Virus record (IMG/VR): IMGVR_UViG_3300017786_003484
Location: 1 to 64,000 of that record
Length of the DNA stretch: 64,000 nt
Direction: 5' to 3' (one strand)
Positions 3,933-49,195 of the stretch are shown here, in pieces (the stretch's first letter is position 1; each line of letters opens with the position of its first letter). The notes under the pieces were generated by a model that was not told the origin of the DNA, did not search any database, and was given only the letters and a program-made list of their open reading frames with translations. A program made the position numbers and the translations under genes.

Positions 3933-4566
3933 TTTGTATCCTTTTCACATCATGTTTAAGTTGATCCATTGAAAAGCGAGTACAAGGTTTAATAACTGCC
4001 CATTGTGTAGTTGAATGAACTGTTATTGGATTCTCAATAGGAACACAATCAGTCCACCAGTTACTCCATATACCACTAACACTAGAAGGGGTTTTGCCTG
4101 TCGTATGTGCTTGAGAAATAACTTCCCATATTAATTTGTTATATTCATTAAAAGTTAGTATCATTCCATTTTTATTATTTGTCATTGCCCAGTTTAAGTT
4201 TGCTGTTAGTAAGTGTTTTGTTATATTATGATTTTCTCTGTATTCTTTATCCATCCATAAACGATTTCCGCCACTAGCATAATCAGGATGTAAGTTAGAA
4301 TGTTCTACTGCACTAACGCCTACTATTGAACCTTTTTCTAAATCATATAATAAATCAATTTGTCCTGTATCTCTTGTCCAACGTCTATGCTCATTTCTTT
4401 CTTCTTTAATAAGGTATAATAGTCCTGAAGGTTCAGAATTATCCATATTAGGTATTACATGTGATTTTTCGTAGTCTTTAGTCATTCTTTGTAGGAATGT
4501 ATTGTATGCAGATTCATGTTTTTTAAAACTCTCTGCATTTGTGGTTTTTATTTCTAAACTTTGCAT
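3919..4566 (-). CDS. GNAT-family acyltransferase-like protein
   Basis: IVGVSAVE...GGNRLWMDKEYRENH resembles GNAT motif A. Confidence 0.55.
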   Translation of the reverse strand: MQSLEIKTTNAESFKKHESAYNTFLQRMTKDYEKSHVIPNMDNSEPSGLLYLIKEERNEHRRWTRDTGQIDLLYDLEKGSIVGVSAVEHSNLHPDYASGGNRLWMDKEYRENHNITKHLLTANLNWAMTNNKNGMILTFNEYNKLIWEVISQAHTTGKTPSSVSGIWSNWWTDCVPIENPITVHSTTQWAVIKPCTRFSMDQLKHDVKRIQNDYS

Positions 4567-4581
4567 ACTAGTATGTATCTA

Positions 4582-5109
4582 TCAATCGATGTCGTTGCTG
4601 TCCAAGCTCATCAGTAGGTGCCAACGTTTTTCGTTTCCACAATTTATTGCAGTATGTAACTCTCTTGTGTCGACTTTGAACACTCCACCATTGGCAGGTA
4701 TCTCTACTAATTCAGGAGGATCAACAAATAAAAACCGAGCTTGTTTGTTTGTATATGTTGCTATATGTAATCTTTGATGAGGATCTCTATGCATACTATA
4801 ACAGCTACGAGGCTCCATAATCATTATTCTTGTGCGATATACTTTCCATGGAAATTCGTCAAAGAACTTTTCCCAATATGTTCCAATTAAGTCTGGACGT
4901 AATTTATCCCATTGATGCTCGTTGTCGCCTAAATATGTTCCTGTACCTTCAGCATGATCTCCTATGCCGCCTGATTGTAATGCTGTTTGAGATCTAAAGT
5001 CTCCTAGTTCGTTATCCCATGCTAATTTTTTACATTCCTCATGCAACTGTTCTACATCGTTGATAACATAAGGCTTGTCGTTATGTCGCATACGGTACTT
5101 CTTACTCAT
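4582..5109 (-). CDS. Cupin/2OG-Fe(II) oxygenase, aspartyl/asparaginyl beta-hydroxylase-like
   Basis: RTRIMIMEPRSCYSMHRD...RLHI...VDTRELHTAINCG..RWHL: HxD...H triad in a double-stranded beta-helix pattern. Confidence 0.7.
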   Translation of the reverse strand: MSKKYRMRHNDKPYVINDVEQLHEECKKLAWDNELGDFRSQTALQSGGIGDHAEGTGTYLGDNEHQWDKLRPDLIGTYWEKFFDEFPWKVYRTRIMIMEPRSCYSMHRDPHQRLHIATYTNKQARFLFVDPPELVEIPANGGVFKVDTRELHTAINCGNEKRWHLLMSLDSNDID

Positions 5110-6374
5110 TATACCTCTCCTATAACCATAAACCTATTGCATTTTTCTAAGTTTAATTCACCTTGATAATGTATCTTCGATACTCCACATTCTTCAACAA
5201 ACTCGTCTAAATGAGAAAAGCAATTAACATGATCTGGAACATCAAACATATTGTTACCTTGTAATACAACTCTAGTTCCTTTAGGAAGAGACTCGACCCA
5301 ACCTCCGTGGTCATGAAAGTGTTCTGTTATTGTATCAACTATAACAAAATTTTCCATTTTGGTAAAGTCCATGGATCTAATATCTTCATTTGATACTCGG
5401 TAACGTTCAGTTGATACTCCTGCCATTGACATCTCGTTACCATCAACATCTGTTATGTCTGGTGCTGGTACATTTAATATACAAGATGGATCGTTAACAG
5501 TCTTGTCAATATCTACATTAACAACTTTTCCAAACTCTTGTTTACGACAGTTTGCTAAGAAAGGCAATATTCCGAGCCAACCTCCAACTATAATTGTAGT
5601 AGTATCTTCTGTAATCCAGTTTACTTCTTTTAATTTGTCTAGTAACCAAACTTTACTTTTAATTTGATTTCTACTTAATGCATCGTGCCAGTTTAACTTT
5701 GGACTATATGCTATTGCTTTAGACATACGTTTGAGTTCTGATTGTAATTCAGGAAAATAATTTATACTTGCATTATTTGCAAGTACTTCAATATTATCGT
5801 CAACTAAATTTTCTAACATAGTTGTTCTTCCTACTAACAGTCTTGCAAAGTAACATACCTCATAGATGTTTCCTTGTTTTGCTTCTGCTAGTTTATTAGC
5901 ACCCCAGGCTATGTTTTCTAATGCATCAGTTCCGTTTTCTTTTATCCAACCTGCTGTAGCCCATACAGGTTGAGCAATATCTTCTACTACTTGGCAACCT
6001 TTCCAAATTGTATTAATTACTTCATTGGGTGCAGATGTAAACTTGATATTATTATCTTCTCTATGATACATTCCAAGTGCTAGTGCTAGTCTTAACTGAT
6101 TCCATCTTGTTTTTTCTTTAGCAGGTTCTACACATGCTACTAAATCCTGAAAGTTTAAGAAGTTTTCGATTCCAACATTATAAAACAAATGTTCTAAGTC
6201 ATCGTCTGATCCTGTTTCTAAGTTTCTTCTAAGCCAATGTAAGCTACTACGAAACCCAATAAACTCCTCCATAAAATACAAAAAAGCTATTCTATTTTTT
6301 CTAATAGTATCTTCTTTACTTCCTGGTACTAGTCTAGTATTATTCTTTTGTTTTGCTTCTTGTAGTCTTACCAT
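5109..6374 (-). CDS. Class I SAM-dependent methyltransferase with N-terminal extension
   Basis: IIVGGWLG motif I, VNVDID motif II, DTITEH, LQGNN. Start at 6374 (TAATG overlap). Confidence 0.7.
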   Translation of the reverse strand: MVRLQEAKQKNNTRLVPGSKEDTIRKNRIAFLYFMEEFIGFRSSLHWLRRNLETGSDDDLEHLFYNVGIENFLNFQDLVACVEPAKEKTRWNQLRLALALGMYHREDNNIKFTSAPNEVINTIWKGCQVVEDIAQPVWATAGWIKENGTDALENIAWGANKLAEAKQGNIYEVCYFARLLVGRTTMLENLVDDNIEVLANNASINYFPELQSELKRMSKAIAYSPKLNWHDALSRNQIKSKVWLLDKLKEVNWITEDTTTIIVGGWLGILPFLANCRKQEFGKVVNVDIDKTVNDPSCILNVPAPDITDVDGNEMSMAGVSTERYRVSNEDIRSMDFTKMENFVIVDTITEHFHDHGGWVESLPKGTRVVLQGNNMFDVPDHVNCFSHLDEFVEECGVSKIHYQGELNLEKCNRFMVIGEV

Positions 6375-7369
6375 TACTGCCACCATCCAAACAACTTTAA
6401 GTTAGTTCTCCAATGTACATCATCATATGTTAAAGGTTTTTCAGGATGTAACTGTAACTGTTTAAAGAGTAAACTAGCACTTTCGTCTAATATTGGCAAG
6501 TTAAATCCGTAAACCTCATTTACTGCATCTTGGAGTTCCTTCATGCCTCTTTCTGTTATTGTTTCAAAACTCTTGAAGTATTCATTAAACCATTCGTAAT
6601 CCCTGATCAATGTGTAGTCAAAATTATTAAAATATAACTGTCTAATAGCAGTACGAGCACCTATAATACTCCATATACCATTTTTAACATCAGCACCAAC
6701 TGTTAGCCATGTTAGCAATCGTTGATAGTTTGCGGCATGCATTATTTCTTTAATATTGTCTTTATTAATTACTTTTCCAGCTTCGGTTGAAAGTTTAACT
6801 CCTTCTCTAAAGCCTACACGAAAAGCCTGATAAGGAGATGCATTTGTATAAACAGTTGAATAACAACCGGGTAGTTCCTTGTACTGTGATTCGTCCCAAC
6901 AAAAATCAACTTCATCTCGTTCAGTATTTGATGCTTCGTGACTTTTCATTGACATTAGATGTTCTGTATTCCATAGTTTTAATCCGCCATTACCATACAT
7001 TAATCCATTTGTAAACTGTCTACCGCCCCAAGTGTAAGACATAAATCCTATACCTTTAGGAAGACGTAATTCAAAGAAAGCAGGATCTACTATACTATCC
7101 GCATCAACTGTGATTACATATCCAGCATTAGGAAAAACCTGAGCCGCGGCTTTATGACAAGCATCAAATCCTTTAACACCATGTACACGTTGTACTTCTT
7201 GATGTGGTGTTGTTAGTTGTAATGTTTTCCAGTTAGCGTCAGCATTTGGCTCATCAAAACTTAGAAATACAATAGGAATATCTCTGGTAGTTCTAGCAGT
7301 ATGCTTTACATTTCCTGCAAGTATCTTTGCTTTATCGTCTTTTGATAGTTTAAACATTGACATTGTCAA
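6374..7369 (-). CDS. Glycosyltransferase-like protein (GT-A), paralog 3
   Basis: VFLSFDEPNADANW, HGVKGFDACHKAAA, VDAD (DxD), NGLMYGNGGLKLW, AFRVGFREGVKL. Confidence 0.65.
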   Translation of the reverse strand: MTMSMFKLSKDDKAKILAGNVKHTARTTRDIPIVFLSFDEPNADANWKTLQLTTPHQEVQRVHGVKGFDACHKAAAQVFPNAGYVITVDADSIVDPAFFELRLPKGIGFMSYTWGGRQFTNGLMYGNGGLKLWNTEHLMSMKSHEASNTERDEVDFCWDESQYKELPGCYSTVYTNASPYQAFRVGFREGVKLSTEAGKVINKDNIKEIMHAANYQRLLTWLTVGADVKNGIWSIIGARTAIRQLYFNNFDYTLIRDYEWFNEYFKSFETITERGMKELQDAVNEVYGFNLPILDESASLLFKQLQLHPEKPLTYDDVHWRTNLKLFGWWQ

Positions 7370-8216: not shown

Positions 8217-8220
8217 CTAA

Positions 8221-12067: not shown

Positions 12068-12095
12068 ATTAATATCCTAGAGTTATATATGCACT

Positions 12096-12128: not shown

Positions 12129-13118
12129 TTAAGTTTGTGTCCACGGAGATGGATTTGATACTACAGGTTGTGGAATATCTAATGTTACATTTTCTTCTGT
12201 AACACTACTTGGATGAACCATACTTGCTGTTATTGAAAGATCTCCGCTTGTGGTTATTGATGTAGAAGTTCCATCTAATACAATTCTTAAATTTAGATAC
12301 TTATTACTATCTCCGTACACTCTTCCATATACCTTAACTCGTATATTAGCATAACCACCATAGCCGCCATAACCACCATAGCCACCATAGCCACCACCGC
12401 CACCTGCTGGACTAGTATAAAGTAATTTTTCTGTTGTATTCAGTTCACTAAATCCAAGGTCTTGTGTAACTCCAACACTATTTAGACTTTGTGTTGTTTC
12501 GACATTAAGTTTAATGGTTCCCATAGCTATAAATAGATCTCTCCAAGCAGTATATCCTGTACCAGTTCCATTAGCATATGCTAATTCTAATCGTAAGTCT
12601 CCTCCGGCATTAAAGAAGTGTCTAGCACTCTCATAGTATTCTGGATCAGTGCCAAACAAATAATCTAATTGTATTTCAAATTGATTAGTCCAACTTGTAG
12701 AGGAACTGTAAGTGTTTAATGTTGATAATTGTGTAAGATTTGGATCCACGTCATTGCGTTTAATTCTTGCTAATTCTAGTAAATCATGAGCAGTATTAAA
12801 AAAATCTGCTGTAATTTTTCCGCCTCTAGAAGTTACAACTAGCTCGTCATCTGAAGCATCTGTCCTGTATGTGCTAATATTAATTCTATTAACAAGTTCG
12901 TTAGCATAAGAAGATGTAACCTTATCTCCTCTTGCTACAGTCGGTACTTCTGTTCCACCCCAACCCCAACGAATATCATCTTGAACTGCGGCGTCATCTG
13001 TTTCTGATGGACCTTCATTTGCATGTGTATCTGCAAATAGTTCATTTACTTGATCTGAAAGATTATTAAAATAATCTTTCGTAATTTTATCGCCACGGCT
13101 ATTTGGGTGCCCAGACAT
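12129..13118 (-). CDS. Virion structural/tail protein with (GGY)n loop
   Basis: Three RGxK(I/V)T repeats at N-terminus, ARHFFNAGG motif, GGGGGYGGYGGYGGYGGY. Confidence 0.6.
   Translation of the reverse strand: MSGHPNSRGDKITKDYFNNLSDQVNELFADTHANEGPSETDDAAVQDDIRWGWGGTEVPTVARGDKVTSSYANELVNRINISTYRTDASDDELVVTSRGGKITADFFNTAHDLLELARIKRNDVDPNLTQLSTLNTYSSSTSWTNQFEIQLDYLFGTDPEYYESARHFFNAGGDLRLELAYANGTGTGYTAWRDLFIAMGTIKLNVETTQSLNSVGVTQDLGFSELNTTEKLLYTSPAGGGGGYGGYGGYGGYGGYANIRVKVYGRVYGDSNKYLNLRIVLDGTSTSITTSGDLSITASMVHPSSVTEENVTLDIPQPVVSNPSPWTQT
12351..12404 (-). repeat. 9-bp tandem repeat encoding GGY
   Basis: (GGNGGNTAT) x5 on minus strand, synonymous variation between units. Confidence 0.85.
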
Positions 13119-14230: not shown

Positions 14231-14262
14231 AGTTTATATCCTTTACCTATTATTTAGTACAA

Positions 14263-14886
14263 TTAAGCTCTTATTCTAAGTGTGTAAATAATTTGTATTC
14301 TTTGTTCTGCGGTTTTCGTAACCGGATGAAACCTATAATGCGTTAATAATCTTCCGCTATCTAAGCCTGTAATTCCTTTGCTTTTCAAGCCAATTTCATC
14401 AAAAATTATCTCTCCATTACTTGCTAATCCTGAATCATATGTTGCGTCAGTTAGATTAGTTATATACCCACCAGTTTGTGAGTTAATATCTGGGTCTGCA
14501 TAATCAAGTGTAGTTGTAACAACTAAATCAGTAAACTGCGATCCTCTAATATGATCTGTTTCTACTTTATTATCATTTGGTAAAATGTTACCAAAATCTA
14601 AAGCATCTACTAATCTATAATATAAAGGATGATACAGCCCTGCATTCTCACCAAGAATATTAGCTGGCTTATATGTAATTACTCCTGAATTAATAGTACT
14701 TGCTCCGTCACCAAAATGTATTTCGCTAACAATACTGTTACCACTACTCATTACTTCAGCTAAGGTTTGACTCATGTTTTCTTTATGAACTGAGTTCTTT
14801 CCTTCGCGAAGTATTTGTTTTGTGTCTAGATCGACAATTTTTACGAAACCTTCGATGCTTGCATTTATATCTTGAATATGTGTCAT
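14263..14886 (-). CDS. Virion structural protein (baseplate-associated)
   Basis: FDEIGL...LLTH..FHPV.K...IQI.YTLRI motif; position in structural operon. Confidence 0.55.
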   Translation of the reverse strand: MTHIQDINASIEGFVKIVDLDTKQILREGKNSVHKENMSQTLAEVMSSGNSIVSEIHFGDGASTINSGVITYKPANILGENAGLYHPLYYRLVDALDFGNILPNDNKVETDHIRGSQFTDLVVTTTLDYADPDINSQTGGYITNLTDATYDSGLASNGEIIFDEIGLKSKGITGLDSGRLLTHYRFHPVTKTAEQRIQIIYTLRIRA

Positions 14887-14917
14887 TAGTAATATTTAGC
14901 CTGTTTGTTATAACCCG

Positions 14918-26994: not shown

Positions 26995-27368
26995 TAAAAT
27001 TCTCCTTTATTAAATTCCAAAGGAAGTGTAGTTACTTCATTCTCTGGACGATAAATTAGTGTTACATCAACATTAACTGAATGTTCATTTTCTATTGTCT
27101 GAACTTCAACGAATTCCCATCTAGGATCTTCTGAAATAATTCTAACAACATCATCTCTTATTAGTTGTCTTGTACTGTCATCAAGTGGATCAAAAAGCAA
27201 TTCCCATATTATACTGCCATGCGATGGTAGCATAATACGTTCGCCTAGCTTTGTTCCAAATTGATTCAATAAATCTTGTTTTGCTAGATCAAAGTTAGTC
27301 AGCACTGGTTTTGTAAAACTAGTGCCTATTGTACTGTATCCTTTGTATTTTGTTGTCAATGTAGCCAT
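26994..27368 (-). CDS. Baseplate wedge subunit, T4 gp25-like
   Basis: DLLNQFGTKLGERIMLPSHGSIIWELLFDP...EDPR. Confidence 0.85.
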   Translation of the reverse strand: MATLTTKYKGYSTIGTSFTKPVLTNFDLAKQDLLNQFGTKLGERIMLPSHGSIIWELLFDPLDDSTRQLIRDDVVRIISEDPRWEFVEVQTIENEHSVNVDVTLIYRPENEVTTLPLEFNKGEF

Positions 27369-27407
27369 AACTATATTTAGCACCCTTATTAAGCAGGGTT
27401 ATTACTG

Positions 27408-33245: not shown

Positions 33246-33251
33246 TATTTA
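33246..33251 (-). promoter_or_regulatory. Late promoter-like TAAATA heading the baseplate operon
   Basis: Minus strand GGTAAATATAG followed by GGAG RBS and ATG at 33226. Confidence 0.6.
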
Positions 33252-33329: not shown

Positions 33330-34298
33330 ATGACAACTAATCTAAAAAACGTATACTTAAAGAATAAAGACTTACTTCTTCAGATCCATAAAAGCAAACT
33401 TCAGTTTTGCTGGAAAGAAGATAGGAAATATGGTGATTATGATATCATTTTGCATGACCTAAAACATTTCCATAATCGCAAGACTATAGCATTTCCGGAA
33501 GGAGCTCTTAACATTGCAAAGGCTACTCGAGCCAAAAGATTTGCAGAAGCACTTCATAAAGAGGCTATTAAGCAATGGGAAGAAGAAGGAAAACGTCCTA
33601 GCAAGAAACCAAAAATGGATCAATTTATGGTACCAACAAAATCTATTTCTAACGATGAAATAGTGGTTAGGCTCATGGATTGGGATCATATTCCAGAAGA
33701 ACCAGGACGTAAGACTAATCCTAAAACACCTGCAGATTACAGAGCTAAAGTTAACTTTCCTCCTTTTAAACATTATGTTAAGGAAGACGGAGAGTGGAAA
33801 GAAGTAGTTCGTAGTCATTGGAAAGGTGATTTAGAAACTGGCCACTTTAGTATTGATCATGGAAAGATTACTAATAGGCTTGGCGCAATGTTTCTAAAAT
33901 TATGTGAACGTTATAGTTTACGAAGTAACTGGAGAGGATATAGTTATATTGACGAAATGAGAGGACAGGCTCTTATACAATTAACGCAGATTGCTTTACA
34001 ATTTGATGAGAGCAAGAGTCAAAACCCGTTTGCTTATTATACTGCCGCCGTAACTAATAGTTTTACTCGAGTATTAAATGTTGAAAAGAGACAACGTGAT
34101 ATACGTGACGATTTACTACAAGAAGCAGGGCAAACTCCAAGTTGGACCAGACAAGCAGAGCATATTGAAAAAGTAAAAGCAGAAGTTGAAAGAGCTCTTG
34201 CTTTAAAAGAAGCAGAGAAAGCAGAAAAAGAAAAAGAAGAAAAAGAACCATTATCAGAGATGATTGGACATAATAATCCGCCACCAGAATTTCAGTAA
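33330..34298 (+). CDS. Late-transcription sigma factor, T4 gp55-like
   Basis: YLKNKDLL, NWRGYSYIDEM, FDESKSQNPFAYYT..NSF.R....EK; upstream of gp47/gp46 as in T4-like phages. Confidence 0.85.
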   Translation: MTTNLKNVYLKNKDLLLQIHKSKLQFCWKEDRKYGDYDIILHDLKHFHNRKTIAFPEGALNIAKATRAKRFAEALHKEAIKQWEEEGKRPSKKPKMDQFMVPTKSISNDEIVVRLMDWDHIPEEPGRKTNPKTPADYRAKVNFPPFKHYVKEDGEWKEVVRSHWKGDLETGHFSIDHGKITNRLGAMFLKLCERYSLRSNWRGYSYIDEMRGQALIQLTQIALQFDESKSQNPFAYYTAAVTNSFTRVLNVEKRQRDIRDDLLQEAGQTPSWTRQAEHIEKVKAEVERALALKEAEKAEKEKEEKEPLSEMIGHNNPPPEFQ

Positions 34299-34308: not shown

Positions 34309-34692
34309 ATGACAAATCCATTTGAAGACCAGGAACGTTTTATGTTAGCATGTGATCAAACTGTTGCAGAAGAAAACATTCCACAATACCAGCTATACCT
34401 TTCGTTAATTAACGAAGAAGCAAAGGAGTTAGTTGATGCAATTAAAGCCAGTGATAAACAGGAACAATTAGATGCCTTAATTGATATTCTTGTTGTTACA
34501 ATTGGCGCAATCCATTCTATGGGAGCCGATGGCGAAGGTGCTTGGAGCGAAGTAATGTCTACAAACTTTGCCAAAATTGATGAAGTAACTGGTAAAGTTA
34601 ATAAAAGAAGTGACGGTAAAATTCTTAAGCCAAAAGATTGGGAAAGCCCAAAATTGGAGCAATATTTACAAAGGAAACTCGAAGATGAATAG
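34309..34692 (+). CDS. MazG-like NTP pyrophosphohydrolase (PRA-PH family)
   Basis: LINEEAKEL..DALIDILVV..G, EVMSTNFAK, DGKILKP. Confidence 0.85.
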   Translation: MTNPFEDQERFMLACDQTVAEENIPQYQLYLSLINEEAKELVDAIKASDKQEQLDALIDILVVTIGAIHSMGADGEGAWSEVMSTNFAKIDEVTGKVNKRSDGKILKPKDWESPKLEQYLQRKLEDE

Positions 34693-38355: not shown

Positions 38356-38359
38356 ACAC

Positions 38360-38922: not shown

Positions 38923-39150
38923 CTAACGCATCTGATTAGCAATACCCTTTTTACCATACATTGTATCTATCTTCTCTTTAACTACTTCTGATAAGATTAC
39001 TCTGTCAGTATATGGCATATCCCATACAACTTGTATAGGGTTGCTACTCCAAACACTTAAATTACATATATCTTGGGTTAGGGCTCTTGACTCAGATTCA
39101 AAACTTTCGATATACTTTGTAATCTTATTTGAATCAGTTCCTAGACTCAA
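38923..39150 (-). CDS. gp51-like small protein; likely -1 frameshift extension of the upstream gene
   Basis: VWDMPYTDRVIL motif; only a TTG start overlapping the upstream stop; frame is open back to a T8 run. Confidence 0.6.
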   Translation of the reverse strand: MSLGTDSNKITKYIESFESESRALTQDICNLSVWSSNPIQVVWDMPYTDRVILSEVVKEKIDTMYGKKGIANQMR

Positions 39151-40040
39151 GAGCCTTCGGAAAAAAAACTTGTTGGATCAAAAAGCATATCTGTTTTGTA
39201 TTCTTCTTGGCAAAAATCACATTTAGCTGAAACTTCTCTGATAATTCCAAATTCTTGGAATGCTTTTAATTCTTCTTCTAACCTATCAACTGAGCCTCTG
39301 TCGAGGTTACCCAACCAGTCAGCAATAAATTTTATATCAGTTATTTCTTGTGGTTCTGCTTCTCCGGTACCTGGGATAACAACTTTAAGAATTGCGCCAA
39401 TCATTAAGTCATGACTTAGATCAACTAATTGAGCAAAGCCTGCATTTGCAATTTCAGTTTGTCTTTCTACTGGTTCTTCTCGTTGTTCACTTGACTGTAA
39501 TGCCCTCATCGAATCAAATTGCATTCGTAGTAAACGTGATTGATCTTTTAAATTATACGGTCTTAGATGTACTTCTAAGTTATTTGCAAGTTTCACGATG
39601 CCTAATTTAGCTGGAATTGGCTTTAATGTACCAATTATCTGTCCTAAACTTACATTTATTCGTTGAGACTTACCATCAGACTCGTTACAGCCATGACTGA
39701 TATCCATTGGCATATCGTCTCCGTAACTTGCCATTTTAATTGCAACTAAAATCATATCAACATCTGCTGACGGAACTTCATCAACATCAGCAATGTCTGG
39801 ACAAGAACTTTTGATTACACCTCTCATTGCTTCACCGTTAAATAAAGCGTCAGGGTTTTTAAGGCGTAATTCGTCTTTTGCAGTCATTGGATATATTGCA
39901 AGTTCCCCGCTTTCAGTTAACTTAGGTGGCTGTTTATAGTATCTTCCATTAGAAGGAAGAGTAATATATGTTCCAGGTTGCCTAAAATAATCCGATAAAG
40001 GGTTAGCAGTTTGCCCGGAAAGTGGGTTTTTATTATCCAT
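39147..40040 (-). CDS. Baseplate hub/tail assembly chaperone, T4 gp26-like
   Basis: ITLPSNGRYY, PMTAKDE, DVDMILVAIK..SYG, C-terminal CDFC...DPTSFF. Confidence 0.75.
   Translation of the reverse strand: MDNKNPLSGQTANPLSDYFRQPGTYITLPSNGRYYKQPPKLTESGELAIYPMTAKDELRLKNPDALFNGEAMRGVIKSSCPDIADVDEVPSADVDMILVAIKMASYGDDMPMDISHGCNESDGKSQRINVSLGQIIGTLKPIPAKLGIVKLANNLEVHLRPYNLKDQSRLLRMQFDSMRALQSSEQREEPVERQTEIANAGFAQLVDLSHDLMIGAILKVVIPGTGEAEPQEITDIKFIADWLGNLDRGSVDRLEEELKAFQEFGIIREVSAKCDFCQEEYKTDMLFDPTSFFSEGS
39161..39168 (-). other. Slippery sequence T TTT TTT (-1 frameshift site)
   Basis: Minus strand AGT TTT TTT TCC GAA GGC TCT TGA; -1 frame reads TTT TTC CGA AGG CTC TTG AGT... into the downstream ORF. 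Confidence 0.6.
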
Positions 40041-40134
40041 GTAGTTAATCCTATCAGGTAAATAGGCTTATAGAAACCTATATTTGTAACTATACTTATA
40101 TTCGGTTATAAAGCACAAAGGTCCAAAAGGTAAT

Positions 40135-43134
40135 ATGGAAGAAGAATTAAAAGAAGCAATTGGTAAATTAACCGATCAGATTTCCAGTATGAATAAACAA
40201 ACAGGCTCAAGACCTGGTGGAAGTCGTGGATCTACAGGTCCTAAAGTTGATGCTACTGCTTCGGCAATGGACAAACTAAAAGATGGGGTCAAAGGTACTA
40301 CTTCAAGTTTAAAGAAAACTGCTGAATCAAACGAAAAACTTGTACAAGCATCTAAAAAACTTACCTGGGAGCAAAAATCACAAATAAGAGGATTGCAAAA
40401 TTTTGGTAAAGGATTACTTGACGGAAGTAAAAAAGGACAAGATTCTTTAAACCAGTTATCCGGAGCTCTAACAAATAGCACAGGAAAAGTTACTAAAGTA
40501 CTTGGCGCCTTTGCCGCTGGTTTAGGTTTTGCATGGGGAACATTAGAAAATTTTGCAGATGCCGCTAGAGGAGCAAGTGGAGCATTAAACTTAGGTGCTG
40601 TTGGTGTTGGCTTAATGCAAACACAAAGTATGATGTCAGGACTTGGCAAAGAGTTTGCAACTGTTATTAATGAAAGCGGAGGCGGTTTTAAATTATTAGG
40701 AGCAACTACAGAAGACGCAGTTAGAAACTTATCTCAAATGTCGAGAGCAGTTAGAAACGGTTCTTCTATGATGGGCAACCTTACAAAAGAATTTGGTGTG
40801 TCAGCAAAAGCAGTCGACGAAACTGCAAAGTTAACTGCTCAGTTAGGACTTACAGAAAAAGATAGTGCCAGCTTAATGGCCGCTAGTTTAGATGTTGCAA
40901 GAAGGTCTGGTGCTTCACAAGAAACAGCAATGCAGACTGCAATTAAAAGTTATGCTACTACTGCAAAGACAGCTCGAGGATTAAGCGATCAATTTGGTGT
41001 TAGTGCCAAGGTAATTATGCAGGCTTCAATGGCTTTCCAGAAATCTATTGCAGGACAAAGAGCCGCAATGCTTGGAGTAGGAACAGATGCTACTGAAATC
41101 CAAGGAGTAATGGGTCAAATGCTTGGTAATCTAAGCCAAGATCAAAGAGATAGAGCATCAGCCGCAATGGCCGCAGGAGAAATTGGACAAGCTATTGCTA
41201 TTGCAACTGAAGGTAAATCTGGAGCAGAAGCAAGTGCAACTGCTGACATGATAAGAATGATATCTGAAGCAAACACCGGAAAAGGTGATGGTACAGTTTT
41301 ACAAGCTCTTAAAGGTATGGAAAATGCTTCCATGGAACAGTTTGCAAGCAGTAGAAACTTTAGAGATCAAAATATGAATGCCGCGGCAGGAATTGGCGCC
41401 GCATTTAAACGATTAAGTGATGATGCAGATAAGTCTAATAAAGATGCTAAGAAAAATGCAGAAGAAGGTCAAACTACAGAAGCAAGCAATATTAAGTCTC
41501 TTACACAAATGTCAACAGCCGTTGATTATGCTAAAGGATCATTTTATGGTTTAATAGCAGGTGGTGTTGGATTACTAGGATCGTTTGTATCGTTAGCGGC
41601 CGCAGGTAGTGCCGCCGCTATAGCAATGGGTGGCGGAGGCTTAACAGGAATGTTAGGTGGACTTAGCAAAGGACTTAATAAAATAACATCTGGTGCGTTA
41701 GGATCAGTAGGTAAAGTAGGCGGAGCAGTATCTGGTGCAACCGGAGGAATGCTTAGTAAAGCAAAAGGATTTTTAGGAATTGGAGCAGGAGGAGGTTCTG
41801 CTACTCAGTCTGTACCTGGTGTGCCTAGCACTAAAGGAATGCAAACAGCAGTAGGTGAAGTTAAAAGCCTAGGAAAGATGATACAAGATACTTTATCAGG
41901 TATAGGAAACGGAATTGCAAAATTAGCAAGAGGCATAGGCAGTTCATTATCTTCTATTGGAACAGGAATTTCAAAGTTAGCAAAAGGAATTGGCAGATCA
42001 ATGTCCTCTCTTGGTAAAGGTATTGGAGATTTAGGAGAAGGACTAGGTAGAGGAATTGGAAAACTAGTTGAAAGTTCTTTAAAAGGAATTGGTAAAGGAC
42101 TTGCCGCAGTATCTAATCCAAAATATTTAATTGGAGCCGCAGTACTAGCCGCAACAGGTGGTGCAATGTGGATTGCTGGAAAAGCATTCCAACAGTTTGC
42201 AAATATTAATTGGGGCGGAGTAATTGCTGGAGGCATTGCCCTAGCCGCAGTAACAGCAGGTGCCGCATTAATTGGATCATCTGGTATGATTGCACCTATT
42301 CTAATTGGAGCAGTAGCAATTGGAGCTCTTGGAGCCGCACTAATACCATTTAGCTATGCCGCTAAACTTGCAGGCGAAGGAATGGTAGACTTAGGTAGAG
42401 GGTTAAGAATAATTGGTGATGTTCCAATTCCAACGTTACTTGCTATAGGTCCTGCATTAGCATTAATGGGAGTAGGTTTAGCCGCACTTTCAGCCGCTGG
42501 TGCAGTAAGTTCTCTTTTAGGAGCATTCCAAGATGAAGGACCAATTGATAAAATTGTAAAAATTGCCAAAGCCGCTCCTGGTGTTAACTTAATGGCTAAG
42601 TCTTTAAGAACATTTGGTATTAACATAATGGTCTTTAACAAAGGACTTGAAGGTTTAAGTATGACAGCATTAGATGCTTTAGAAGACTTTAATGACGTTG
42701 CAAGTAATATATCACAATCTTCTGTAACTGCAATGGCAGATTTAGCAGTAGCAACTTCGTTACTTGGATTTAATATAAAAGATATAGATTGGAATCAATT
42801 AGTTTTACCAGTAGACATTGGTGAAAGATATCATAATTTAGCAGAAGGAATGGTAGCAACTGCTGAAGCAATGGATAAGATGCCTAAGCCAGGTATGTGG
42901 GACACTATTGTTGCAGGTGTAGGCAACTTGTTTGGAGTAAATGGTGGAGAACAAGGTAGCTTGACTGAGTCAGTTCAGAAAGAAAGAACCACAACTACAA
43001 CATACAGCGATGGATCTGTTGATACAAATACAGAGATGATTACAGTTCTTAAGTCTATTGACGGACATATGGGCAAAGTTACTCAGAATACTAAGAAAGA
43101 AGTAACTGTAACAGCACCTCGCTTTGGTAGTTAA
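40135..43134 (+). CDS. Tape-measure-like protein
   Basis: 999 aa, Ala/Gly-rich helical, 11-residue GIG repeats, hydrophobic segments; divergent from chaperone gene. Confidence 0.65.
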   Translation: MEEELKEAIGKLTDQISSMNKQTGSRPGGSRGSTGPKVDATASAMDKLKDGVKGTTSSLKKTAESNEKLVQASKKLTWEQKSQIRGLQNFGKGLLDGSKKGQDSLNQLSGALTNSTGKVTKVLGAFAAGLGFAWGTLENFADAARGASGALNLGAVGVGLMQTQSMMSGLGKEFATVINESGGGFKLLGATTEDAVRNLSQMSRAVRNGSSMMGNLTKEFGVSAKAVDETAKLTAQLGLTEKDSASLMAASLDVARRSGASQETAMQTAIKSYATTAKTARGLSDQFGVSAKVIMQASMAFQKSIAGQRAAMLGVGTDATEIQGVMGQMLGNLSQDQRDRASAAMAAGEIGQAIAIATEGKSGAEASATADMIRMISEANTGKGDGTVLQALKGMENASMEQFASSRNFRDQNMNAAAGIGAAFKRLSDDADKSNKDAKKNAEEGQTTEASNIKSLTQMSTAVDYAKGSFYGLIAGGVGLLGSFVSLAAAGSAAAIAMGGGGLTGMLGGLSKGLNKITSGALGSVGKVGGAVSGATGGMLSKAKGFLGIGAGGGSATQSVPGVPSTKGMQTAVGEVKSLGKMIQDTLSGIGNGIAKLARGIGSSLSSIGTGISKLAKGIGRSMSSLGKGIGDLGEGLGRGIGKLVESSLKGIGKGLAAVSNPKYLIGAAVLAATGGAMWIAGKAFQQFANINWGGVIAGGIALAAVTAGAALIGSSGMIAPILIGAVAIGALGAALIPFSYAAKLAGEGMVDLGRGLRIIGDVPIPTLLAIGPALALMGVGLAALSAAGAVSSLLGAFQDEGPIDKIVKIAKAAPGVNLMAKSLRTFGINIMVFNKGLEGLSMTALDALEDFNDVASNISQSSVTAMADLAVATSLLGFNIKDIDWNQLVLPVDIGERYHNLAEGMVATAEAMDKMPKPGMWDTIVAGVGNLFGVNGGEQGSLTESVQKERTTTTTYSDGSVDTNTEMITVLKSIDGHMGKVTQNTKKEVTVTAPRFGS

Positions 43135-43162
43135 GTATTAATATAAAAAGGTAAGTAATAGT

Positions 43163-44827
43163 ATGGCATCATGGAAAAAACATTTTAAGATATGGGATCC
43201 CCAAGCTGAACAGACTAATAATGGTCCAAGACAGCAGGGAGGTAGTTCATCTAAGTTCGCTAGTTGGCTACAAGACGTGTACACAGGGCAACCTAACAGA
43301 GTTGAACGTTATAGTCAGTATGATCAAATGGATCAAGACTCAGAAGTTAATGCGGCCTTAGACACAATTACAGAATTTTGTACTCAGGAGGATCCTTTAA
43401 CACATCTTCCTTTTGCTTTAAGATGGTCCTCTGACCCAACACCAAGTGAAAATACAACTATTAATGAAACACTTAAAAAATGGTGTGCTATTAACGGATT
43501 TGATCAAAAACTATTTAGAACTTTTAGAAGTGCTATTAAGTTTGGAGATCACTTCTTTTTACGTGATCCGGAAACATTTGAATTATATTGGGTAAATCCA
43601 GGTGATGTTAAAAGAGCAGTAATTAACGAAGCTGAAGGTCGTAAAGTTGAACAGTATGTTATTAGTAACTTACACCCTAACTTAGGAGCAAAAGTAGCAA
43701 CTAAGCCAATTGAAAGTGTTCAATCAATGGCCAATGCAGTACAAGCAGGACCAAACAATCAATATAACGTTTCAAATAGTGCTTATAAAAGTGGTAACAC
43801 AGGAACCGAAGTTACAGTTGATGCAAAAGATATGATTCATATTAGTTTAAGCGAAGGCTTAGATGCTAACTGGCCTTTTGGAGCAAGTATACTTGATAGT
43901 GTTTTTAAAATTTATAAACAAAAAGAATTATTAGAAGATGCGATTATCATTTATCGTGTACAAAGAGCACCAGAACGTAGAGTATTTTATATTGATACAG
44001 GTAATTTACCTAGTCATCAAGCAATGGGATTTCTTGAAAGAGTTAAAAACGAAATACACCAAAGACGTATTCCTACTAGATCAGGTGGTGGTACTACTAT
44101 GGATGCAAGTTACAATCCTTTGAGCATTATGGAAGACTTTTTCTTTGCTCAATCAGCTGACGGTAGAGGAAGTAAAGTTGAAGTATTACCGGGTGGAACA
44201 AACTTAGGTGAAATTGACGATTTAAAATTCTTTTCAAACAAATTAATGAGAGGTTTAAGAATTCCTAGTAGTTATATGCCTACTGGACCTGACGATAGTG
44301 CAGTTCAATTAACAGATGGTCGTGTAGGAACAGCATTAATTCAAGAATATCGCTTTAATAGATACTGTCAGAGACTCCAAGGTTTAATTATGCCTATGCT
44401 ATGTAAAGAGTTTAAAACTTTTGTAAAGCATAGAGGTATTAATGTAGACACATCTTCTTTTGAGATTGATATGCTAGAGCCTCAAAACTTTAGTGATTAT
44501 AGACAAATTGAAGTTAATAATGCAAGGGCTAGTGTGTTTACACAATTAGCAGAAGTACCTTACATGAGTCATAGATTTAAGTTACAAAAGTTCTTAGGTT
44601 TAACTGATGCAGAGTTACTTGAAAATGAAAAACTTTGGTTAGAAGAAAATAAAAACCCAACACCAGCTGAAGGCGACGAAGAAGCTGGATTTAGCGATAT
44701 TGGTGGCGGTGCCGGCGGTGGCGGACTAAGTGATGGTGATATGGACTTTGCCGACGACTTAGAAAATGCAGAACCAGCCGCAGACGATGGTGGCGGTGAA
44801 TCTGCACCTACAGAACCAGAAGCATAA
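43163..44827 (+). CDS. Portal protein, T4 gp20-like
   Basis: EDAIIIYRVQRAPERRVFYIDTGNLP, MEDFFF, GRGSKVEVLPGG.NLGEIDD. Confidence 0.95.
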   Translation: MASWKKHFKIWDPQAEQTNNGPRQQGGSSSKFASWLQDVYTGQPNRVERYSQYDQMDQDSEVNAALDTITEFCTQEDPLTHLPFALRWSSDPTPSENTTINETLKKWCAINGFDQKLFRTFRSAIKFGDHFFLRDPETFELYWVNPGDVKRAVINEAEGRKVEQYVISNLHPNLGAKVATKPIESVQSMANAVQAGPNNQYNVSNSAYKSGNTGTEVTVDAKDMIHISLSEGLDANWPFGASILDSVFKIYKQKELLEDAIIIYRVQRAPERRVFYIDTGNLPSHQAMGFLERVKNEIHQRRIPTRSGGGTTMDASYNPLSIMEDFFFAQSADGRGSKVEVLPGGTNLGEIDDLKFFSNKLMRGLRIPSSYMPTGPDDSAVQLTDGRVGTALIQEYRFNRYCQRLQGLIMPMLCKEFKTFVKHRGINVDTSSFEIDMLEPQNFSDYRQIEVNNARASVFTQLAEVPYMSHRFKLQKFLGLTDAELLENEKLWLEENKNPTPAEGDEEAGFSDIGGGAGGGGLSDGDMDFADDLENAEPAADDGGGESAPTEPEA

Positions 44828-44844
44828 AAGGAATAAGTAAAGTT

Positions 44845-45051
44845 ATGAGATTTAATGACTTAACAAGAATACAAGACGAAATCGAAGAAGAAATCGATCC
44901 TGAGGTAGCATTCTATTCCGACATGCGTAGACACCGTATGACTTTAGAACATGTTAACAGGTTGCGTAAACTTCGTGAACTAAGGAAATACGAGCAAAAA
45001 ACAAGACTTGAAGCCATTACTAAAATGTATCAACGTCCTCCTGCAGTTTAG
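44845..45051 (+). CDS. Small head-module protein
   Basis: 68 aa, TLEHVNRLRK; between portal and scaffold. Confidence 0.65.
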   Translation: MRFNDLTRIQDEIEEEIDPEVAFYSDMRRHRMTLEHVNRLRKLRELRKYEQKTRLEAITKMYQRPPAV

Positions 45052-45212
45052 CAATATTCTTTAAAAATATTAGATTTTCATTAATAATAAGCCGGTTTGT
45101 AAAAATTGTGCCAAAAAGTACAGTTTTTACCCTATAACTACGGCTTTTTCGTGCGTCATTAGTAAGTACTTATTGGTGAATACCCGCCTTTCGCGATAAG
45201 GAGAAAAAGAAT

Positions 45213-45929: not shown

Positions 45930-45933
45930 TAAG

Positions 45934-46572: not shown

Positions 46573-46583
46573 GGAGACAAATT

Positions 46584-47696: not shown

Positions 47697-47712
47697 AGAA
47701 GGAGACATTAAA

Positions 47713-48912
47713 ATGTCAGAAGCTCTTTTTGAAGCTAAAAATTGGTCCGCAACTAAAGACGCCTTAACAGAAGGTCTTAACGGACAACGTAAATCTACAA
47801 TGGAAGTTTGCTTAGAAAATACTAAAAAGTATTTGGCTGAGACAGCAACCACTGGTGCAACAGCATCTGGAAACGTAGCAGTACTTAACAAAGTAATTCT
47901 ACCAGTTATCAGACGTGTTATGCCAACAACCATCGCTAACGAATTAGTCGGTGTTCAACCTATGCAGGGACCTGTTTCTCAGATTCATACACTTCGTGTA
48001 CGTTATGCTGAGGCAGCCGCCGCTTCTTCAAACGAAGACGGTGTAGTTGGTGCAGAGGTTGTTGCTGGTGATGAAGCATTATCACCATTTGCTATTGCTA
48101 ACCAGTACTCAGGTGGTGCTGATGGTAAAGCAGACGCAACTGCTACTAAAGAGGGAACTGGTGGAAACAAAATGTCAATCCAGATCCTTAAAGAAACTGT
48201 AGAAGCTAAATCCAGAAAGCTATCAGCTCGTTGGACATTTGAAGCCGCTCAGGACGCACAAGCCATTCATGGTGTTGACGTTGAAGCTGAAATCATGGCC
48301 GCACTTGCTCAAGAAATTACTGCTGAAATTGACCAGGAAGTTATCCAGTCATTAACAGCACTTTCCGGATCTGCATTTGGTACATATGACCAAGCCGCAG
48401 TAAGTGGTACAGCTAACTTCGTAGGTGACGAGCATGCCGCTCTTGCAGTTCTAATTAACAGAGCCGCTAACGACATTGCTTCTCGTACAAGACGTGGTGC
48501 AGGTAACTACATTGTTGTAAGCCCAACAGCTTTAACAATTCTACAATCTGCTACAACTTCAGCATTCGCTAGAACAACTGAAGGAACTTTTGAAGCACCA
48601 ACAAATACTAAGTTTGTTGGAACACTTAACAGCTCAGTAAGAGTATACGTTAACCACTACAGTGGTGACGCGGCTCCTGTATTGATTGGTTATAAAGGTG
48701 CAAATGAAATGGATGCTCCGGCATTCTATTGCCCATACATTCCATTGATGAGCTCAGGTGTTGTATTAGATCCTAACACATTCGAGCCAACTGTCAGCTT
48801 TATGACACGTTACGGATATGTTGAGCTTTCTAACACAGCTTCATCTCTTGGTAACGCGGCTGATTATGTTAATAACATTGCAATCACAAGCGGTAACCTT
48901 TCTTTCATCTAG
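47713..48912 (+). CDS. Major capsid protein, T4 gp23-like
   Basis: RRVMPTTIANELVGVQPM.GP, SRKLSARWTFEAAQD, EITAEIDQE, FYCPYIPL, TRYG. Confidence 0.96.
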   Translation: MSEALFEAKNWSATKDALTEGLNGQRKSTMEVCLENTKKYLAETATTGATASGNVAVLNKVILPVIRRVMPTTIANELVGVQPMQGPVSQIHTLRVRYAEAAAASSNEDGVVGAEVVAGDEALSPFAIANQYSGGADGKADATATKEGTGGNKMSIQILKETVEAKSRKLSARWTFEAAQDAQAIHGVDVEAEIMAALAQEITAEIDQEVIQSLTALSGSAFGTYDQAAVSGTANFVGDEHAALAVLINRAANDIASRTRRGAGNYIVVSPTALTILQSATTSAFARTTEGTFEAPTNTKFVGTLNSSVRVYVNHYSGDAAPVLIGYKGANEMDAPAFYCPYIPLMSSGVVLDPNTFEPTVSFMTRYGYVELSNTASSLGNAADYVNNIAITSGNLSFI

Positions 48913-48939
48913 TCCTAGACTAAGCGAAGAAAAAAAATT

Positions 48940-48975
48940 AAGCAGGGCTAGTTTTACTAGCTCTGCTTTTTCTTT
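48940..48975 (+). terminator. Rho-independent terminator after MCP
   Basis: AAGCAGGGCTAG-TTTTA-CTAGCTCTGCTT followed by a T-run. Confidence 0.8.
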
Positions 48976-48988
48976 GATAAATATTTCT

Positions 48989-49195
48989 ATGTTAGCATCT
49001 ATGAAAGACAGATTATCAAGAGCAAAAATTTGTCATGAGTGCGAGTTTTATACTAGATTTACAAAGCAATGCAAAGAGTGCGGTTGCTTGATCAACTTAA
49101 AAATATCATTTTCTCAAACTTCATGTCCAGTAGGTAAATGGAAATCAGTTGAAAATGGTAGTCAAACTAATTTAATTAAAAATTTTATCTCTTAA
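48989..49195 (+). CDS. Small Cys-rich (zinc-binding-like) protein
   Basis: CHEC...CKECGC...CPVGKW; true start likely 48989. Confidence 0.65.
   Translation: MLASMKDRLSRAKICHECEFYTRFTKQCKECGCLINLKISFSQTSCPVGKWKSVENGSQTNLIKNFIS

What the first reader, a model, noticed from the sequence alone, without database searches (positions are those of the whole stretch)
4566..48989. Late promoters placed 5 nt before ATG imply leaderless late mRNAs
Seen: TA(A/C)(A/G)TA followed by exactly 5 nt and then ATG at the portal (TAAGTA 43152-57, ATG 43163), 44834-39/44845, 48978-83/48989, gp25-like (27374-79/27368, minus) and GNAT-like (TACATA 4572-77/4566, minus) genes; a 6-nt spacer at 14893-98/14886. Most lack a well-placed SD. 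The same hexamer occurs with longer SD-bearing leaders at 14251, 33246, 45163, 49213, 55789 and 58401, and also at 40059. Established: T4 gp55 recognises a -10-only TATAAATA with the start a few nt downstream. Inference: transcription starts at or next to the AUG, so a subset of late genes is translated leaderless, perhaps to set stoichiometry.
Basis: partly seen in the sequence, partly recalled or inferred. Interest (0 to 1): 0.6.

Follow-up and report, generated by a model that had tools for sequence, protein, structure and literature searches.

The report
Late promoters fused to start codons
In this marine giant phage and its relatives, about twenty virion genes have a T4-style late promoter box exactly five bases before their ATG and no ribosome-binding site, so their late messages very probably begin at the start codon itself; no transcript 5' end has been mapped yet.

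Summary
In the 244-kb genome, TAA(A/G)TA lies exactly 5 nt before the first ATG of 17 genes, or 18 with one TACATA. That compares with 13 of 9,268 other ATGs (p about 1e-19). These genes lack a Shine-Dalgarno (SD) sequence, although 57% of the other genes have one. Base -1 is T in 16 of 18.

Hexamer-to-ATG distances are bimodal: 5-6 nt, almost none at 7-13 nt, then 14-37 nt. In the long class 37 of 41 have an SD, and it never starts nearer than position 5 after the hexamer.

The window encodes a gp55-family late sigma factor (33330-34298). By T4 numbering (box at -13 to -6), a 5-nt spacer puts the A of ATG at +1.

In uncultured relatives the 5-nt spacing holds in 34 of 34 upstream regions of the 68-aa head protein gene and 40 of 43 of the gp25-like gene, while the flanks diverge. 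Portal spacing varies from 5 to 8 nt. T4 and PA5oct lack the pattern.

Leaderless late mRNAs are the best explanation (about 0.7). No transcription start was mapped, because only metatranscriptome contigs were available. Thermus phages are a precedent, so this is a new variant of a known kind.

The parts
43152..43165 (+). TAAGTA (43152-57), 5-nt spacer ATAGT, then ATG of the portal gene (43163-44827). Candidate leaderless late promoter.
   Evidence: Sequence. Portal identity. No in-frame upstream start. In relatives the hexamer is kept, with spacer 5 (21), 6 (1), 7 (14) or 8 (3).
44834..44847 (+). TAAGTA, spacer AAGTT, then ATG of a 68-aa gene (44845-51). This gene is the orthologue of a PA5oct protein detected in virions.
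   Evidence: The spacer is 5 in 34 of 34 distinct relatives. The hexamer carries 2 bits per position (1.3 at the A/G position) and the flanks carry 0-0.6 bit. Base -1 is T in 31 of 34.
48978..48991 (+). TAAATA, spacer TTTCT, then ATG of a 68-aa gene (48989-49195).
   Evidence: The conserved N-terminus in relatives starts at this ATG. Spacer is 4 (10 relatives), 5 (3) or 6 (1), always directly after a terminator.
48940..48975 (+). Intrinsic terminator (13-bp stem plus T-run) after the major capsid gene, directly upstream of the 48978 promoter box.
   Evidence: (fold energy -19.7 kcal/mol). Metatranscriptome contigs end at 48893-48947 and depth falls after that.
27366..27379 (-). TAAATA (27379-27374 on the minus strand), spacer TAGTT, then ATG 27368 of the gp25-like baseplate wedge gene (26994-27368).
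   Evidence: The spacer is 5 in 40 of 43 distinct relatives. Base -1 is T in 39 and C in 4.
14884..14898 (-). TAAATA, 6-nt spacer TTACTA, then ATG 14886 of a 207-aa gene. A start at the sixth base after the hexamer would leave a 1-nt leader.
   Evidence: Three genes in the genome have spacer 6.
4564..4577 (-). TACATA variant, spacer CTAGT, then ATG 4566 of a 215-aa gene. Weaker candidate.
   Evidence: no SD. TACATA is not enriched between genes. No GNAT match.
33330..34298 (+). Gene for a 322-aa gp55-family late sigma factor, the presumed reader of the hexamer.
   Evidence: phrog_12791 E 8.5e-85 and phrog_234 (the T4 gp55 family) E 5e-25. One search found it with T4 gp55. T4 pocket residues Y97 and T99 are kept, and H95 is F. 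gp47- and gp46-like genes follow it.
45163..45168 (+). TAAGTA late promoter with a 44-nt leader carrying AAGGAG, before gene 45213.
   Evidence: RNA contigs of three runs begin at 45192-45211 and summed depth rises several-fold here in all four runs.
49213..49218 (+). TAAATA late promoter with a 25-nt SD leader before gene 49244.
   Evidence: GGTAAATA plus an SD is kept in 16 relatives, with the hexamer 18-26 nt before the ATG.
55789..55794 (+). TAAATA late promoter with a 31-nt SD leader before the 840-aa structural gene.
58401..58406 (+). TAAATA late promoter with a 67-nt leader before the tail-fibre-like gene 58474.
40059..40064 (+). TAAATA late promoter with a 70-nt leader before the 999-aa gene upstream of portal.
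33246..33251 (-). TAAATA late promoter. GGAG starts at the 6th base after the hexamer, so the predicted mRNA begins with the SD.
14251..14256 (-). TAAATA late promoter with a 20-nt SD leader before gene 13118-14230.

Best explanation
TAA(A/G)TA is the -10-like box of late promoters. It is read by host RNA polymerase carrying the phage's gp55-family sigma factor (33330-34298).

At roughly 20 genes the box sits so that transcription starts on the A of the ATG: box at -11 to -6, T at -1, A at +1. These genes include portal, the gp25-like wedge, a small head protein, a PAAR-like protein and other virion proteins. Their promoter-proximal mRNA therefore has no 5' untranslated region and no SD. It must be translated by the leaderless route, in which the ribosome binds a 5'-terminal AUG.

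Other late genes use the same box with minimal SD-bearing leaders.

Shown here: the motif, its spacing and its statistics; the lack of SD; the sigma gene; conservation in relatives.

Inferred: the exact start nucleotide, and that the leaderless RNA is translated.

Because many of these promoters lie inside same-strand gene rows, the same genes may also be read from longer read-through transcripts.
For: 1. Spacing peak. 18 of 304 gene starts carry the hexamer at spacer 5, against 13 of 9,268 other ATGs. Unbiased hexamer counts put TAAATA and TAAGTA on top at that position.
2. Bimodal distances. Spacer 5 holds 17 genes and spacer 6 holds 3; spacers 7-13 hold 2; spacers 12-40 hold 41 hexamer occurrences (all at 14-37 nt). 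Within 60 nt of a start there are 79 sense copies and 25 antisense copies.
3. Internal calibration. In the leadered class 37 of 41 have an SD. Its first base is never nearer than position 5 after the box, and 9 start at positions 5-8. The start therefore lies at about position 5-6.
4. T4 gp55 flips the adenines at -12, -9 and -8, so TATAAATA spans -13 to -6 (PMC7892883). Box plus 5 nt puts the A of ATG at +1.
5. SD strength. The spacer-5 genes are at random level (median -0.95 kcal/mol; random 20-mers -1.9). Other genes have a median of -5.4, and 57% reach -5 or better.
6. Base -1 is T in 16 of 18, against 31% elsewhere.
7. Only ATG is used; there are no GTG or TTG gene starts in this class.
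8. The gp55-family sigma factor is encoded in the window.
9. The genes whose function is known are virion genes.
10. Comparative footprint. The 68-aa gene has spacer 5 in 34 of 34 relatives and the gp25-like gene in 40 of 43, with diverged flanks. In the same relatives, SD-to-ATG gaps in five SD-led gene families each vary by 4-7 nt.
11. Terminators abut the box at 48989 and 242604, leaving no room for another promoter or a leader.
12. At the leadered promoter at 45163, RNA contigs start 18-37 nt after the predicted start and depth steps up.
Against: - No 5' ends were mapped. The RNA runs are assembled contigs, which cannot show starts.
- One contig (X1, depth 7.7) starts at 43107, 56 nt upstream of the portal ATG, so a leadered or read-through portal RNA exists.
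- Portal orthologues have spacers of 7 (14 relatives) and 8 (3 relatives). The 48989 family mostly has spacer 4. So either the start site flexes or leaders of 1-3 nt occur.
- Portal, 77768 and 44845 have AAGG just upstream of the box. This could act as a distant SD on read-through RNA.
- The host is unknown. Leaderless mRNAs are usually translated poorly in SD-using Gram-negative bacteria (my own knowledge).
- No clamp (gp45) or clamp loader was found in the record, which is only 74% complete.
- The first 40 nt of these mRNAs are not significantly less structured than in other genes (p 0.15).
Confidence: 0.7

Rival explanations
1. The hexamer is a late promoter, but the start lies a few bases away from the A. 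The mRNAs then carry 1-3-nt stub leaders, or start inside the ATG at some genes, and are translated by some other SD-independent route.
For: Spacers of 4, 6, 7 and 8 nt occur in orthologues. Three genes in this genome have spacer 6.
Against: Spacing is rigid at 5 nt in two gene families (34 of 34 and 40 of 43). The T(-1)/A(+1) step sits at the ATG at every spacer length. Functionally this is close to the main explanation.
Confidence: 0.12
2. At positions -11 to -6 the hexamer works at the RNA level. It replaces an SD, as an A/U-rich ribosome-binding or coupling signal on polycistronic late mRNAs. The copies with long leaders are a separate promoter use of a similar word.
For: The hexamer sits where an SD would be. 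Most of these genes follow a same-strand gene at 5-60 nt. A contig crosses the junction upstream of portal.
Against: - The spacing is much more rigid than SD spacing in the same phages.
- TAAATA can form at most about three A-U pairs with the anti-SD (my reasoning), and the measured duplex energies of these genes are at random level.
- Conservation of T at -1 has no translational rationale.
- Terminators directly abut the box at two genes.
- The same word with the same GG/GC upstream preference drives SD-bearing leaders.
- The TAA of the hexamer is the upstream stop codon in only 1 of 17 cases (gap of 8 nt).
Confidence: 0.08
3. The boxes are internal promoters that serve only downstream genes and are squeezed into short gaps between genes. 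The adjacent gene is translated only from read-through transcripts, by termination-reinitiation, and the 5'-terminal AUG RNA is not translated.
For: Gaps to the upstream gene are short (1-17 nt) at about eight of the genes. In PA5oct the orthologue of 44845 overlaps the portal stop codon, which is a coupling arrangement.
Against: This does not explain why the distance to the ATG is fixed at 5 nt with T at -1 while the flanks drift. It also does not explain the exclusive use of ATG. Several genes stand in divergent contexts or behind terminators, with no upstream same-strand transcript to read from.
Confidence: 0.07
4. Chance in AT-rich DNA.
For: The genome is 35.6% GC and the word is AT-rich. 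8-10 of the genome's TAA(A/G)TA-N5-ATG matches are not at gene starts.
Against: Fisher p 9e-20. Shuffles never reach the observed count. The arrangement is conserved in relatives.
Confidence: 0.01

Closest known systems
Phage T4 late promoters (TATAAATA at -13 to -6, read by gp55 with gp33 and the gp45 clamp)
   Same: A -10-like A/T-rich box with no conserved -35 region. A gp55-family sigma factor is encoded by the phage. The box stands before virion genes. The box-to-start distance implied here (5 nt) equals that of T4.
   Different: - The consensus is TAA(A/G)TA, with variable bases where T4 has TA. TATAAATA occurs only 7 times in the genome.
- The sigma factor is 322 aa with an N-terminal extension, against 185 aa in T4.
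- T4 and PA5oct show no excess of the box next to ATG. PA5oct's structural genes have 20-30-nt SD leaders.
- No clamp gene was found in the incomplete record.
Thermus phages phiYS40 and Lalka27a (most transcripts leaderless)
   Same: Phage middle/late or late transcripts begin with the A or G of the start codon (bioRxiv 10.64898/2026.04.20.719267; PMC3594737).
   Different: - A -10 box next to the ORF, giving leaderless mRNA, is common in the Deinococcus-Thermus phylum to which the Thermus hosts belong (PMC12340547).
- Those promoters are of other types (TAGGGT, extended -10).
- Here only about a third of the late promoters are of this kind, in a phage whose other genes, and whose relatives, use strong SDs.
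Cellular leaderless genes with a -10 box a few bp before the ORF (Deinococcus-Thermus; from my own knowledge also Actinobacteria and archaea, and gene finders that model this)
   Same: The same logic and the same signature: a -10 box at a fixed short distance from ATG, and no SD (PMC12340547).
   Different: There the housekeeping sigma factor acts genome-wide. Here a phage-specific late sigma factor acts on a defined subset of virion genes.
Lambda cI mRNA from PRM (my own knowledge)
   Same: A phage mRNA that starts at the AUG in an SD-using Gram-negative host.
   Different: That is a single regulatory gene from a sigma-70 promoter, not a conserved set of late structural genes.
Poxvirus late promoters with the initiator TAAATG (my own knowledge; analogy only)
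   Same: A late promoter element fused to the start codon.
   Different: An unrelated polymerase. Those mRNAs gain a 5' poly(A) head by slippage. This is a eukaryotic virus.

Membership tests
T4-type gp55-dependent late promoter | The phage encodes a gp55-family sigma factor | tested here: met
   Window 33330-34298 matches phrog_12791 (E 8.5e-85) and phrog_234, the T4 gp55 family (E 5e-25). T4 gp55 finds it in the genome. T4 residues Y97, T99, R57 and E70 are kept.
T4-type gp55-dependent late promoter | A -10-like box alone, with no conserved -35 region | tested here: met
   In 34 orthologous upstream regions the hexamer carries 2 bits per position (1.3 at the A/G position), and the 30 nt upstream carry mostly 0-0.6 bit.
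T4-type gp55-dependent late promoter | Consensus TATAAATA | tested here: not met
   The motif is TAA(A/G)TA, preceded by variable bases (often GG or GC). The full TATAAATA occurs 7 times in 244 kb. It is a variant consensus.
T4-type gp55-dependent late promoter | Stands before late (virion) genes | tested here: met
   Portal, gp25-like wedge, virion structural proteins, a PAAR-like protein, the head-protease operon, tail-fibre-like and hub-like genes. Timing itself was not measured.
T4-type gp55-dependent late promoter | Sliding clamp (gp45) and gp33 co-activator | tested here: inconclusive
   phrog_223 found nothing, and its controls did not ring either. tblastn with T4 gp45, gp44, gp62 and gp43 found nothing. 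The record is 74% complete. gp33 was not searched.
T4-type gp55-dependent late promoter | Transcription starts about 6 nt after the box | not testable with these tools
   Only contigs of RNA runs are held. Indirect support: no SD begins nearer than position 5 after the box.
Leaderless mRNA | The transcript 5' end is the first base of the start codon | not testable with these tools
   Contigs cannot show starts. It is inferred from T4 numbering and.
Leaderless mRNA | No SD upstream of the start codon | tested here: met
   Median duplex energy with the anti-SD is -0.95 kcal/mol, against -5.4 for other genes. None reaches -6.
Leaderless mRNA | The start codon is AUG | tested here: met
   Box plus 5 nt stands at 17 gene starts with ATG, and at none with GTG or TTG.
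Leaderless mRNA | A -10 box at a fixed short distance from the start codon | tested here: met
   A peak at 5 nt in this genome. 34 of 34 and 40 of 43 in two orthologue families.
Leaderless mRNA | Translated from the 5'-terminal AUG | not testable with these tools
   Needs toeprinting, ribosome profiling or reporter assays.

The most novel reading that the evidence does not exclude
A clade of abundant marine (and some other aquatic) jumbo phages of the T4 superfamily keeps a dedicated 'leaderless regulon'. It consists mostly of low-copy virion parts and is driven by gp55-type promoters fused to the start codon, in hosts that otherwise rely on SD. The phage also tunes the host ribosome late in infection so that these mRNAs are read. 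One possible tool is its own ribosomal protein bS21 gene, at genome position 178113-178409.
Probability: 0.15. Interest if true: 0.75.

Novelty: new variant of a known kind. Interest (0 to 1): 0.55.

Why it matters
It would extend leaderless gene expression to the T4-type late transcription system, and to phages of SD-using bacteria that are common in the sea. The 6-kb test stretch was found in runs from 14 studies, most of them recorded as RNA.

It gives a sequence rule for setting start codons and operon boundaries in this large uncultured clade: TAA(A/G)TA, four bases, T, then ATG.

It offers a compact promoter-plus-start module whose output could be tested as a way to set the ratios of virion parts.

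It also raises the question of whether these phages alter translation initiation late in infection.

Tried and rejected
- Megablast of 4 kb against cultured phages found no match. The nearest cultured relatives share only about 50% portal identity.
- Laying RNA runs gave contigs only, so no start sites. It yielded only circumstantial depth steps and contig ends.
- Clamp and replication genes were not found: phrog_223 with silent controls, and tblastn with T4 gp43, gp44, gp45 and gp62.
- IF1 and IF3 families were not found in the genome.
- Host inference from the phage's ClpX-like gene was uninformative. The best hit was 65% identity, on a 10.9-kb contig of a Chitinophagales metagenome bin, and the other hits scatter over many phyla.
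- No tRNA genes in the window.
- The idea that the TAA of the hexamer is simply the upstream stop codon is rejected. It holds for 1 of 17 genes.
- The first 40 nt of the candidate leaderless mRNAs are not significantly less structured than in other genes (p 0.15).
- The phiYS40 primary paper is not held. Its content is cited through.
- The PA5oct transcriptome paper reports only sigma-70-like promoters and says nothing on leaders.
- The AR9 study found 5' UTRs of 26-491 nt, and the phiKZ early-infection study found no leaderless phage transcript.

Full report
**What the window is**

The window is the first 64 kb of a single 244,432-bp virus record, 35.6% GC. IMG/VR lists it as linear and CheckV rates it 74% complete. 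The portal protein is about 50% identical to those of the jumbo myoviruses Atu_ph07, Phosso, PA5oct and GAP32. Gene order around portal matches PA5oct: structural protein, portal, small virion protein, structural protein, prohead protease (annotated in PA5oct as the prohead assembly/scaffolding protein), unknown, major capsid. A 6-kb stretch is held by marine and estuary runs of 14 studies, most of them recorded as RNA. This is therefore an abundant uncultured marine phage. Its host is unknown.

**Check of the observation**

I called 305 genes with a simple codon-usage caller. I then asked how far the hexamer ends before the first ATG of each gene.

- TA[AC][AG]TA gives 18 genes at spacer 5, made up of 10 TAAATA, 7 TAAGTA and 1 TACATA. 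Spacer 4 gives 1 and spacer 6 gives 3. There is a broad second hump at 18-32 nt.
- Against all other ATGs of the genome (13 of 9,268) the odds ratio is 45, with p 9e-20. Shuffles that keep the composition of each column give a mean of 1.3 and never more than 7.
- Counted without any prior, TAAATA and TAAGTA are the two commonest hexamers at that position.
- The word plus 5 nt is followed by ATG 27 times, but by GTG 2, TTG 6 and ATA 12 times. 17 of the 27 ATGs are gene starts.
- Three further sites are likely members: 48989, 143692 and 140264. In each, an in-frame start exists further upstream, so the first-ATG rule missed them.
- One-mismatch boxes with the same 'agt' spacer and no SD add about six more candidates: TATATA (three, one of which has a moderate SD), TAATTA, TAACTA and TACATA.
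- TACATA as such is not enriched between genes.
- TACGTA is absent from the genome, apparently through restriction-site avoidance.

**What surrounds it**

- The phage uses SD as a rule. 57% of the other genes pair with the anti-SD at -5 kcal/mol or better, against 12% of random 20-mers.
- The spacer-5 genes are at random level: median -0.95 kcal/mol, and none at -6 or better.
- Base -1 is T in 16 of 18, against 31% elsewhere. Base -2 is often G.
- The distance distribution for TAA(A/G)TA is bimodal. There are 17 genes at spacer 5 and 3 at spacer 6. Only two hexamer copies lie at 7-13 nt. There are 41 hexamer occurrences at 12-40 nt (all at 14-37 nt), and 37 of them have a clear SD.
- In that leadered class the SD never begins nearer than the fifth base after the hexamer. 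Nine begin at bases 5-8, so several predicted mRNAs start with the SD itself. This is what a transcription start about six bases after the box predicts. It serves as an internal calibration for the spacer-5 class.
- Sense copies within 60 nt of a start outnumber antisense copies 79 to 25.

Window 33330-34298 encodes a 322-aa protein of the gp55 late-sigma family. T4 residues Y97 and T99, which form the pockets for A-12 and A-8, are kept, as are R57 and E70. gp47- and gp46-like genes follow it; in T4, genes 55, 47 and 46 lie within the same 8-kb stretch.

In the T4 open complex the adenines at -12, -9 and -8 are flipped out (PMC7892883). TATAAATA therefore spans -13 to -6, and TAAATA plus five bases puts the next base at +1. 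With a 5-nt spacer that base is the A of ATG. The conserved T before it gives the pyrimidine/purine step that bacterial RNA polymerase prefers at starts (my own knowledge).

**Which genes**

The genes with known function are virion parts:
- portal, the gp25-like wedge and a PAAR-like protein
- two 'virion structural protein' families
- the 68-aa gene at 44845, which is 49% identical (over 45 aligned residues) to a PA5oct protein found in virions by mass spectrometry

Many have no known function. In T4-type virions, portal, gp25 and the spike-tip protein are low-copy parts (my own knowledge), while the major capsid gene here has a strong AAGGAG.

**Relatives**

IMG/VR holds many relatives, with portal identity of 51-100% and wedge identity of 31-100% (50% or more in all but one locus). 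Results per gene family (48989 family):

| Family | Distinct upstream regions | Hexamer-to-ATG spacing | Other |
|---|---|---|---|
| 68-aa gene (44845) | 34 | 5 nt in 34 of 34 | Hexamer 2 bits per position (1.3 at A/G); flanks 0-0.6 bit; T at -1 in 31, C in 3 |
| gp25-like (27368) | 43 | 5 nt in 40 of 43 | T at -1 in 39, C in 4 |
| 48989 family | 14 | 4 nt (10), 5 nt (3), 6 nt (1) | Box follows a terminator directly |
| portal (43163) | 45 | 5 (21), 6 (1), 7 (14), 8 (3); 22-23 nt in 4 distant relatives | AAGGTAAGTA conserved |

As a control, in the same relatives the SD-to-ATG gap of five SD-led families wanders by 4-7 nt. The leadered promoter of gene 49244 sits 18-26 nt before its ATG. The fixed 5-nt spacing is therefore a tighter constraint than ribosome binding imposes.

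T4 and PA5oct show no excess of the box next to ATG. PA5oct's structural genes carry GATAAATA with 20-30-nt SD leaders.

**RNA evidence (weak)**

Only assembled contigs of four metatranscriptomes could be laid on the window.
- They show a several-fold step up in depth just after the leadered promoter at 45163. Contigs of three runs begin at 45192-45211.
- Contigs end at 48893-48947, at or just before the capsid terminator (48940-48975).
- In run X1 no listed contig bridges 44814-44864, around the ATG at 44845.
- One X1 contig starts at 43107, upstream of the portal ATG, so a read-through portal RNA also exists.
- Contigs cannot place a start site.

**Mechanism and rivals**

The best reading (about 0.7) is that the gp55-like holoenzyme starts on the A of the ATG, and that the resulting leaderless mRNAs are translated. 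Many of the promoters lie inside same-strand gene rows. The same genes can therefore also sit on longer transcripts, where coupling or a distant AAGG may serve.

Rivals:
- Stub leaders of 1-3 nt (0.12).
- An RNA-level substitute for the SD (0.08). This is weakened by the rigid spacing, the T at -1, the abutting terminators and the random-level pairing with the anti-SD.
- Promoters that serve only downstream genes (0.07).
- Chance (0.01).

**Comparison with what is known**

- Leaderless mRNAs with a -10 box next to the ORF are well known in Deinococcus-Thermus (PMC12340547), and from my own knowledge in Actinobacteria and archaea.
- Thermus phages phiYS40 and Lalka27a make mostly leaderless transcripts.
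- In the held library I found no paper that links leaderless mRNAs with gp55-type late promoters.
- The AR9 study reports 5' UTRs of 26-491 nt, and the early-infection study of phiKZ found no leaderless phage transcript.
- I therefore rate this a new variant of a known kind: a T4-type late promoter fused to the start codon, conserved for a defined gene set across a clade whose other genes use SD.

**Limits**

- Gene calls and SD calls are my own simple scripts.
- The temporal class 'late' is inferred from gene function and from the sigma family.
- The host is unknown.
- The record is incomplete.

Noticed in passing
G000:C1:176844-179002 (outside the window; locus L181 172-2330): The phage encodes a ribosomal protein bS21 homologue (98 aa, Pfam PF01165, 60 bits, above the cut-off). 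It sits directly after a ClpX-like ATPase (422 aa) and before a 156-aa ORF that looks like a small heat-shock protein; that last call is by eye and was not tested. The bS21 start overlaps the ClpX stop (TAAATG). It could bear on how the phage handles translation initiation.
   Followed up: partly
whole genome (G000): Strong avoidance of some 6-bp palindromes: TACGTA 0 seen against 28.5 expected, GCTAGC 1 against 27, GTGCAC 1 against 18, AAGCTT 5 against 30. This looks like restriction-site avoidance and could hint at the host's restriction enzymes.
   Followed up: partly
window 27380-27407 (minus strand) and loci L102-L179 at about 1080-1120: There is a short hairpin between the stop of the hub/lysozyme-like gene and the gp25 promoter box. 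Its arms change in step among relatives (CCCT/AGGG, CCAG/CTGG), and no T-run follows. It may be a transcript-end, processing or barrier element. I judged it by eye.
   Followed up: no
window 45090-45150 (+): A long composite hairpin followed by TTTTT lies in the 160-nt gap before the 45163 promoter. An outer AGCCG/CGGCT stem encloses an inner 11-bp stem with one mismatch. It is probably a terminator for the portal / 68-aa gene unit.
   Followed up: no
window 14918-23830 (-): A single 2,970-aa open reading frame lies in the baseplate/tail module. I did not study it.
   Followed up: no
loci L035-L074, upstream of the orthologues of window gene 39147-40040: In 12 relatives TAAGTA lies 1 nt before the ATG of the hub-like 297-aa gene, preceded by AAGGA or a close variant at normal SD distance. 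Here the word cannot act as a promoter for that ATG. In the window the same gene has the box 52 nt upstream instead.
   Followed up: no
window 34850-37638 (+): gp47-like and gp46-like recombination nuclease genes lie just downstream of the gp55-like gene, separated from it by a MazG-like gene at 34309-34692. In T4, genes 55, 47 and 46 likewise lie within one 8-kb stretch. No gp43, gp44, gp45 or gp62 homologue was detected in the 74%-complete record.
   Followed up: partly
window 43132-43137 (+): A second TAAGTA overlaps the stop codon of the 999-aa gene, 25 nt before the portal ATG. Portal may therefore have two tandem late boxes. The upstream copy is lost in the 90%-identity relative L027, where it reads TAACTA.
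   Followed up: no
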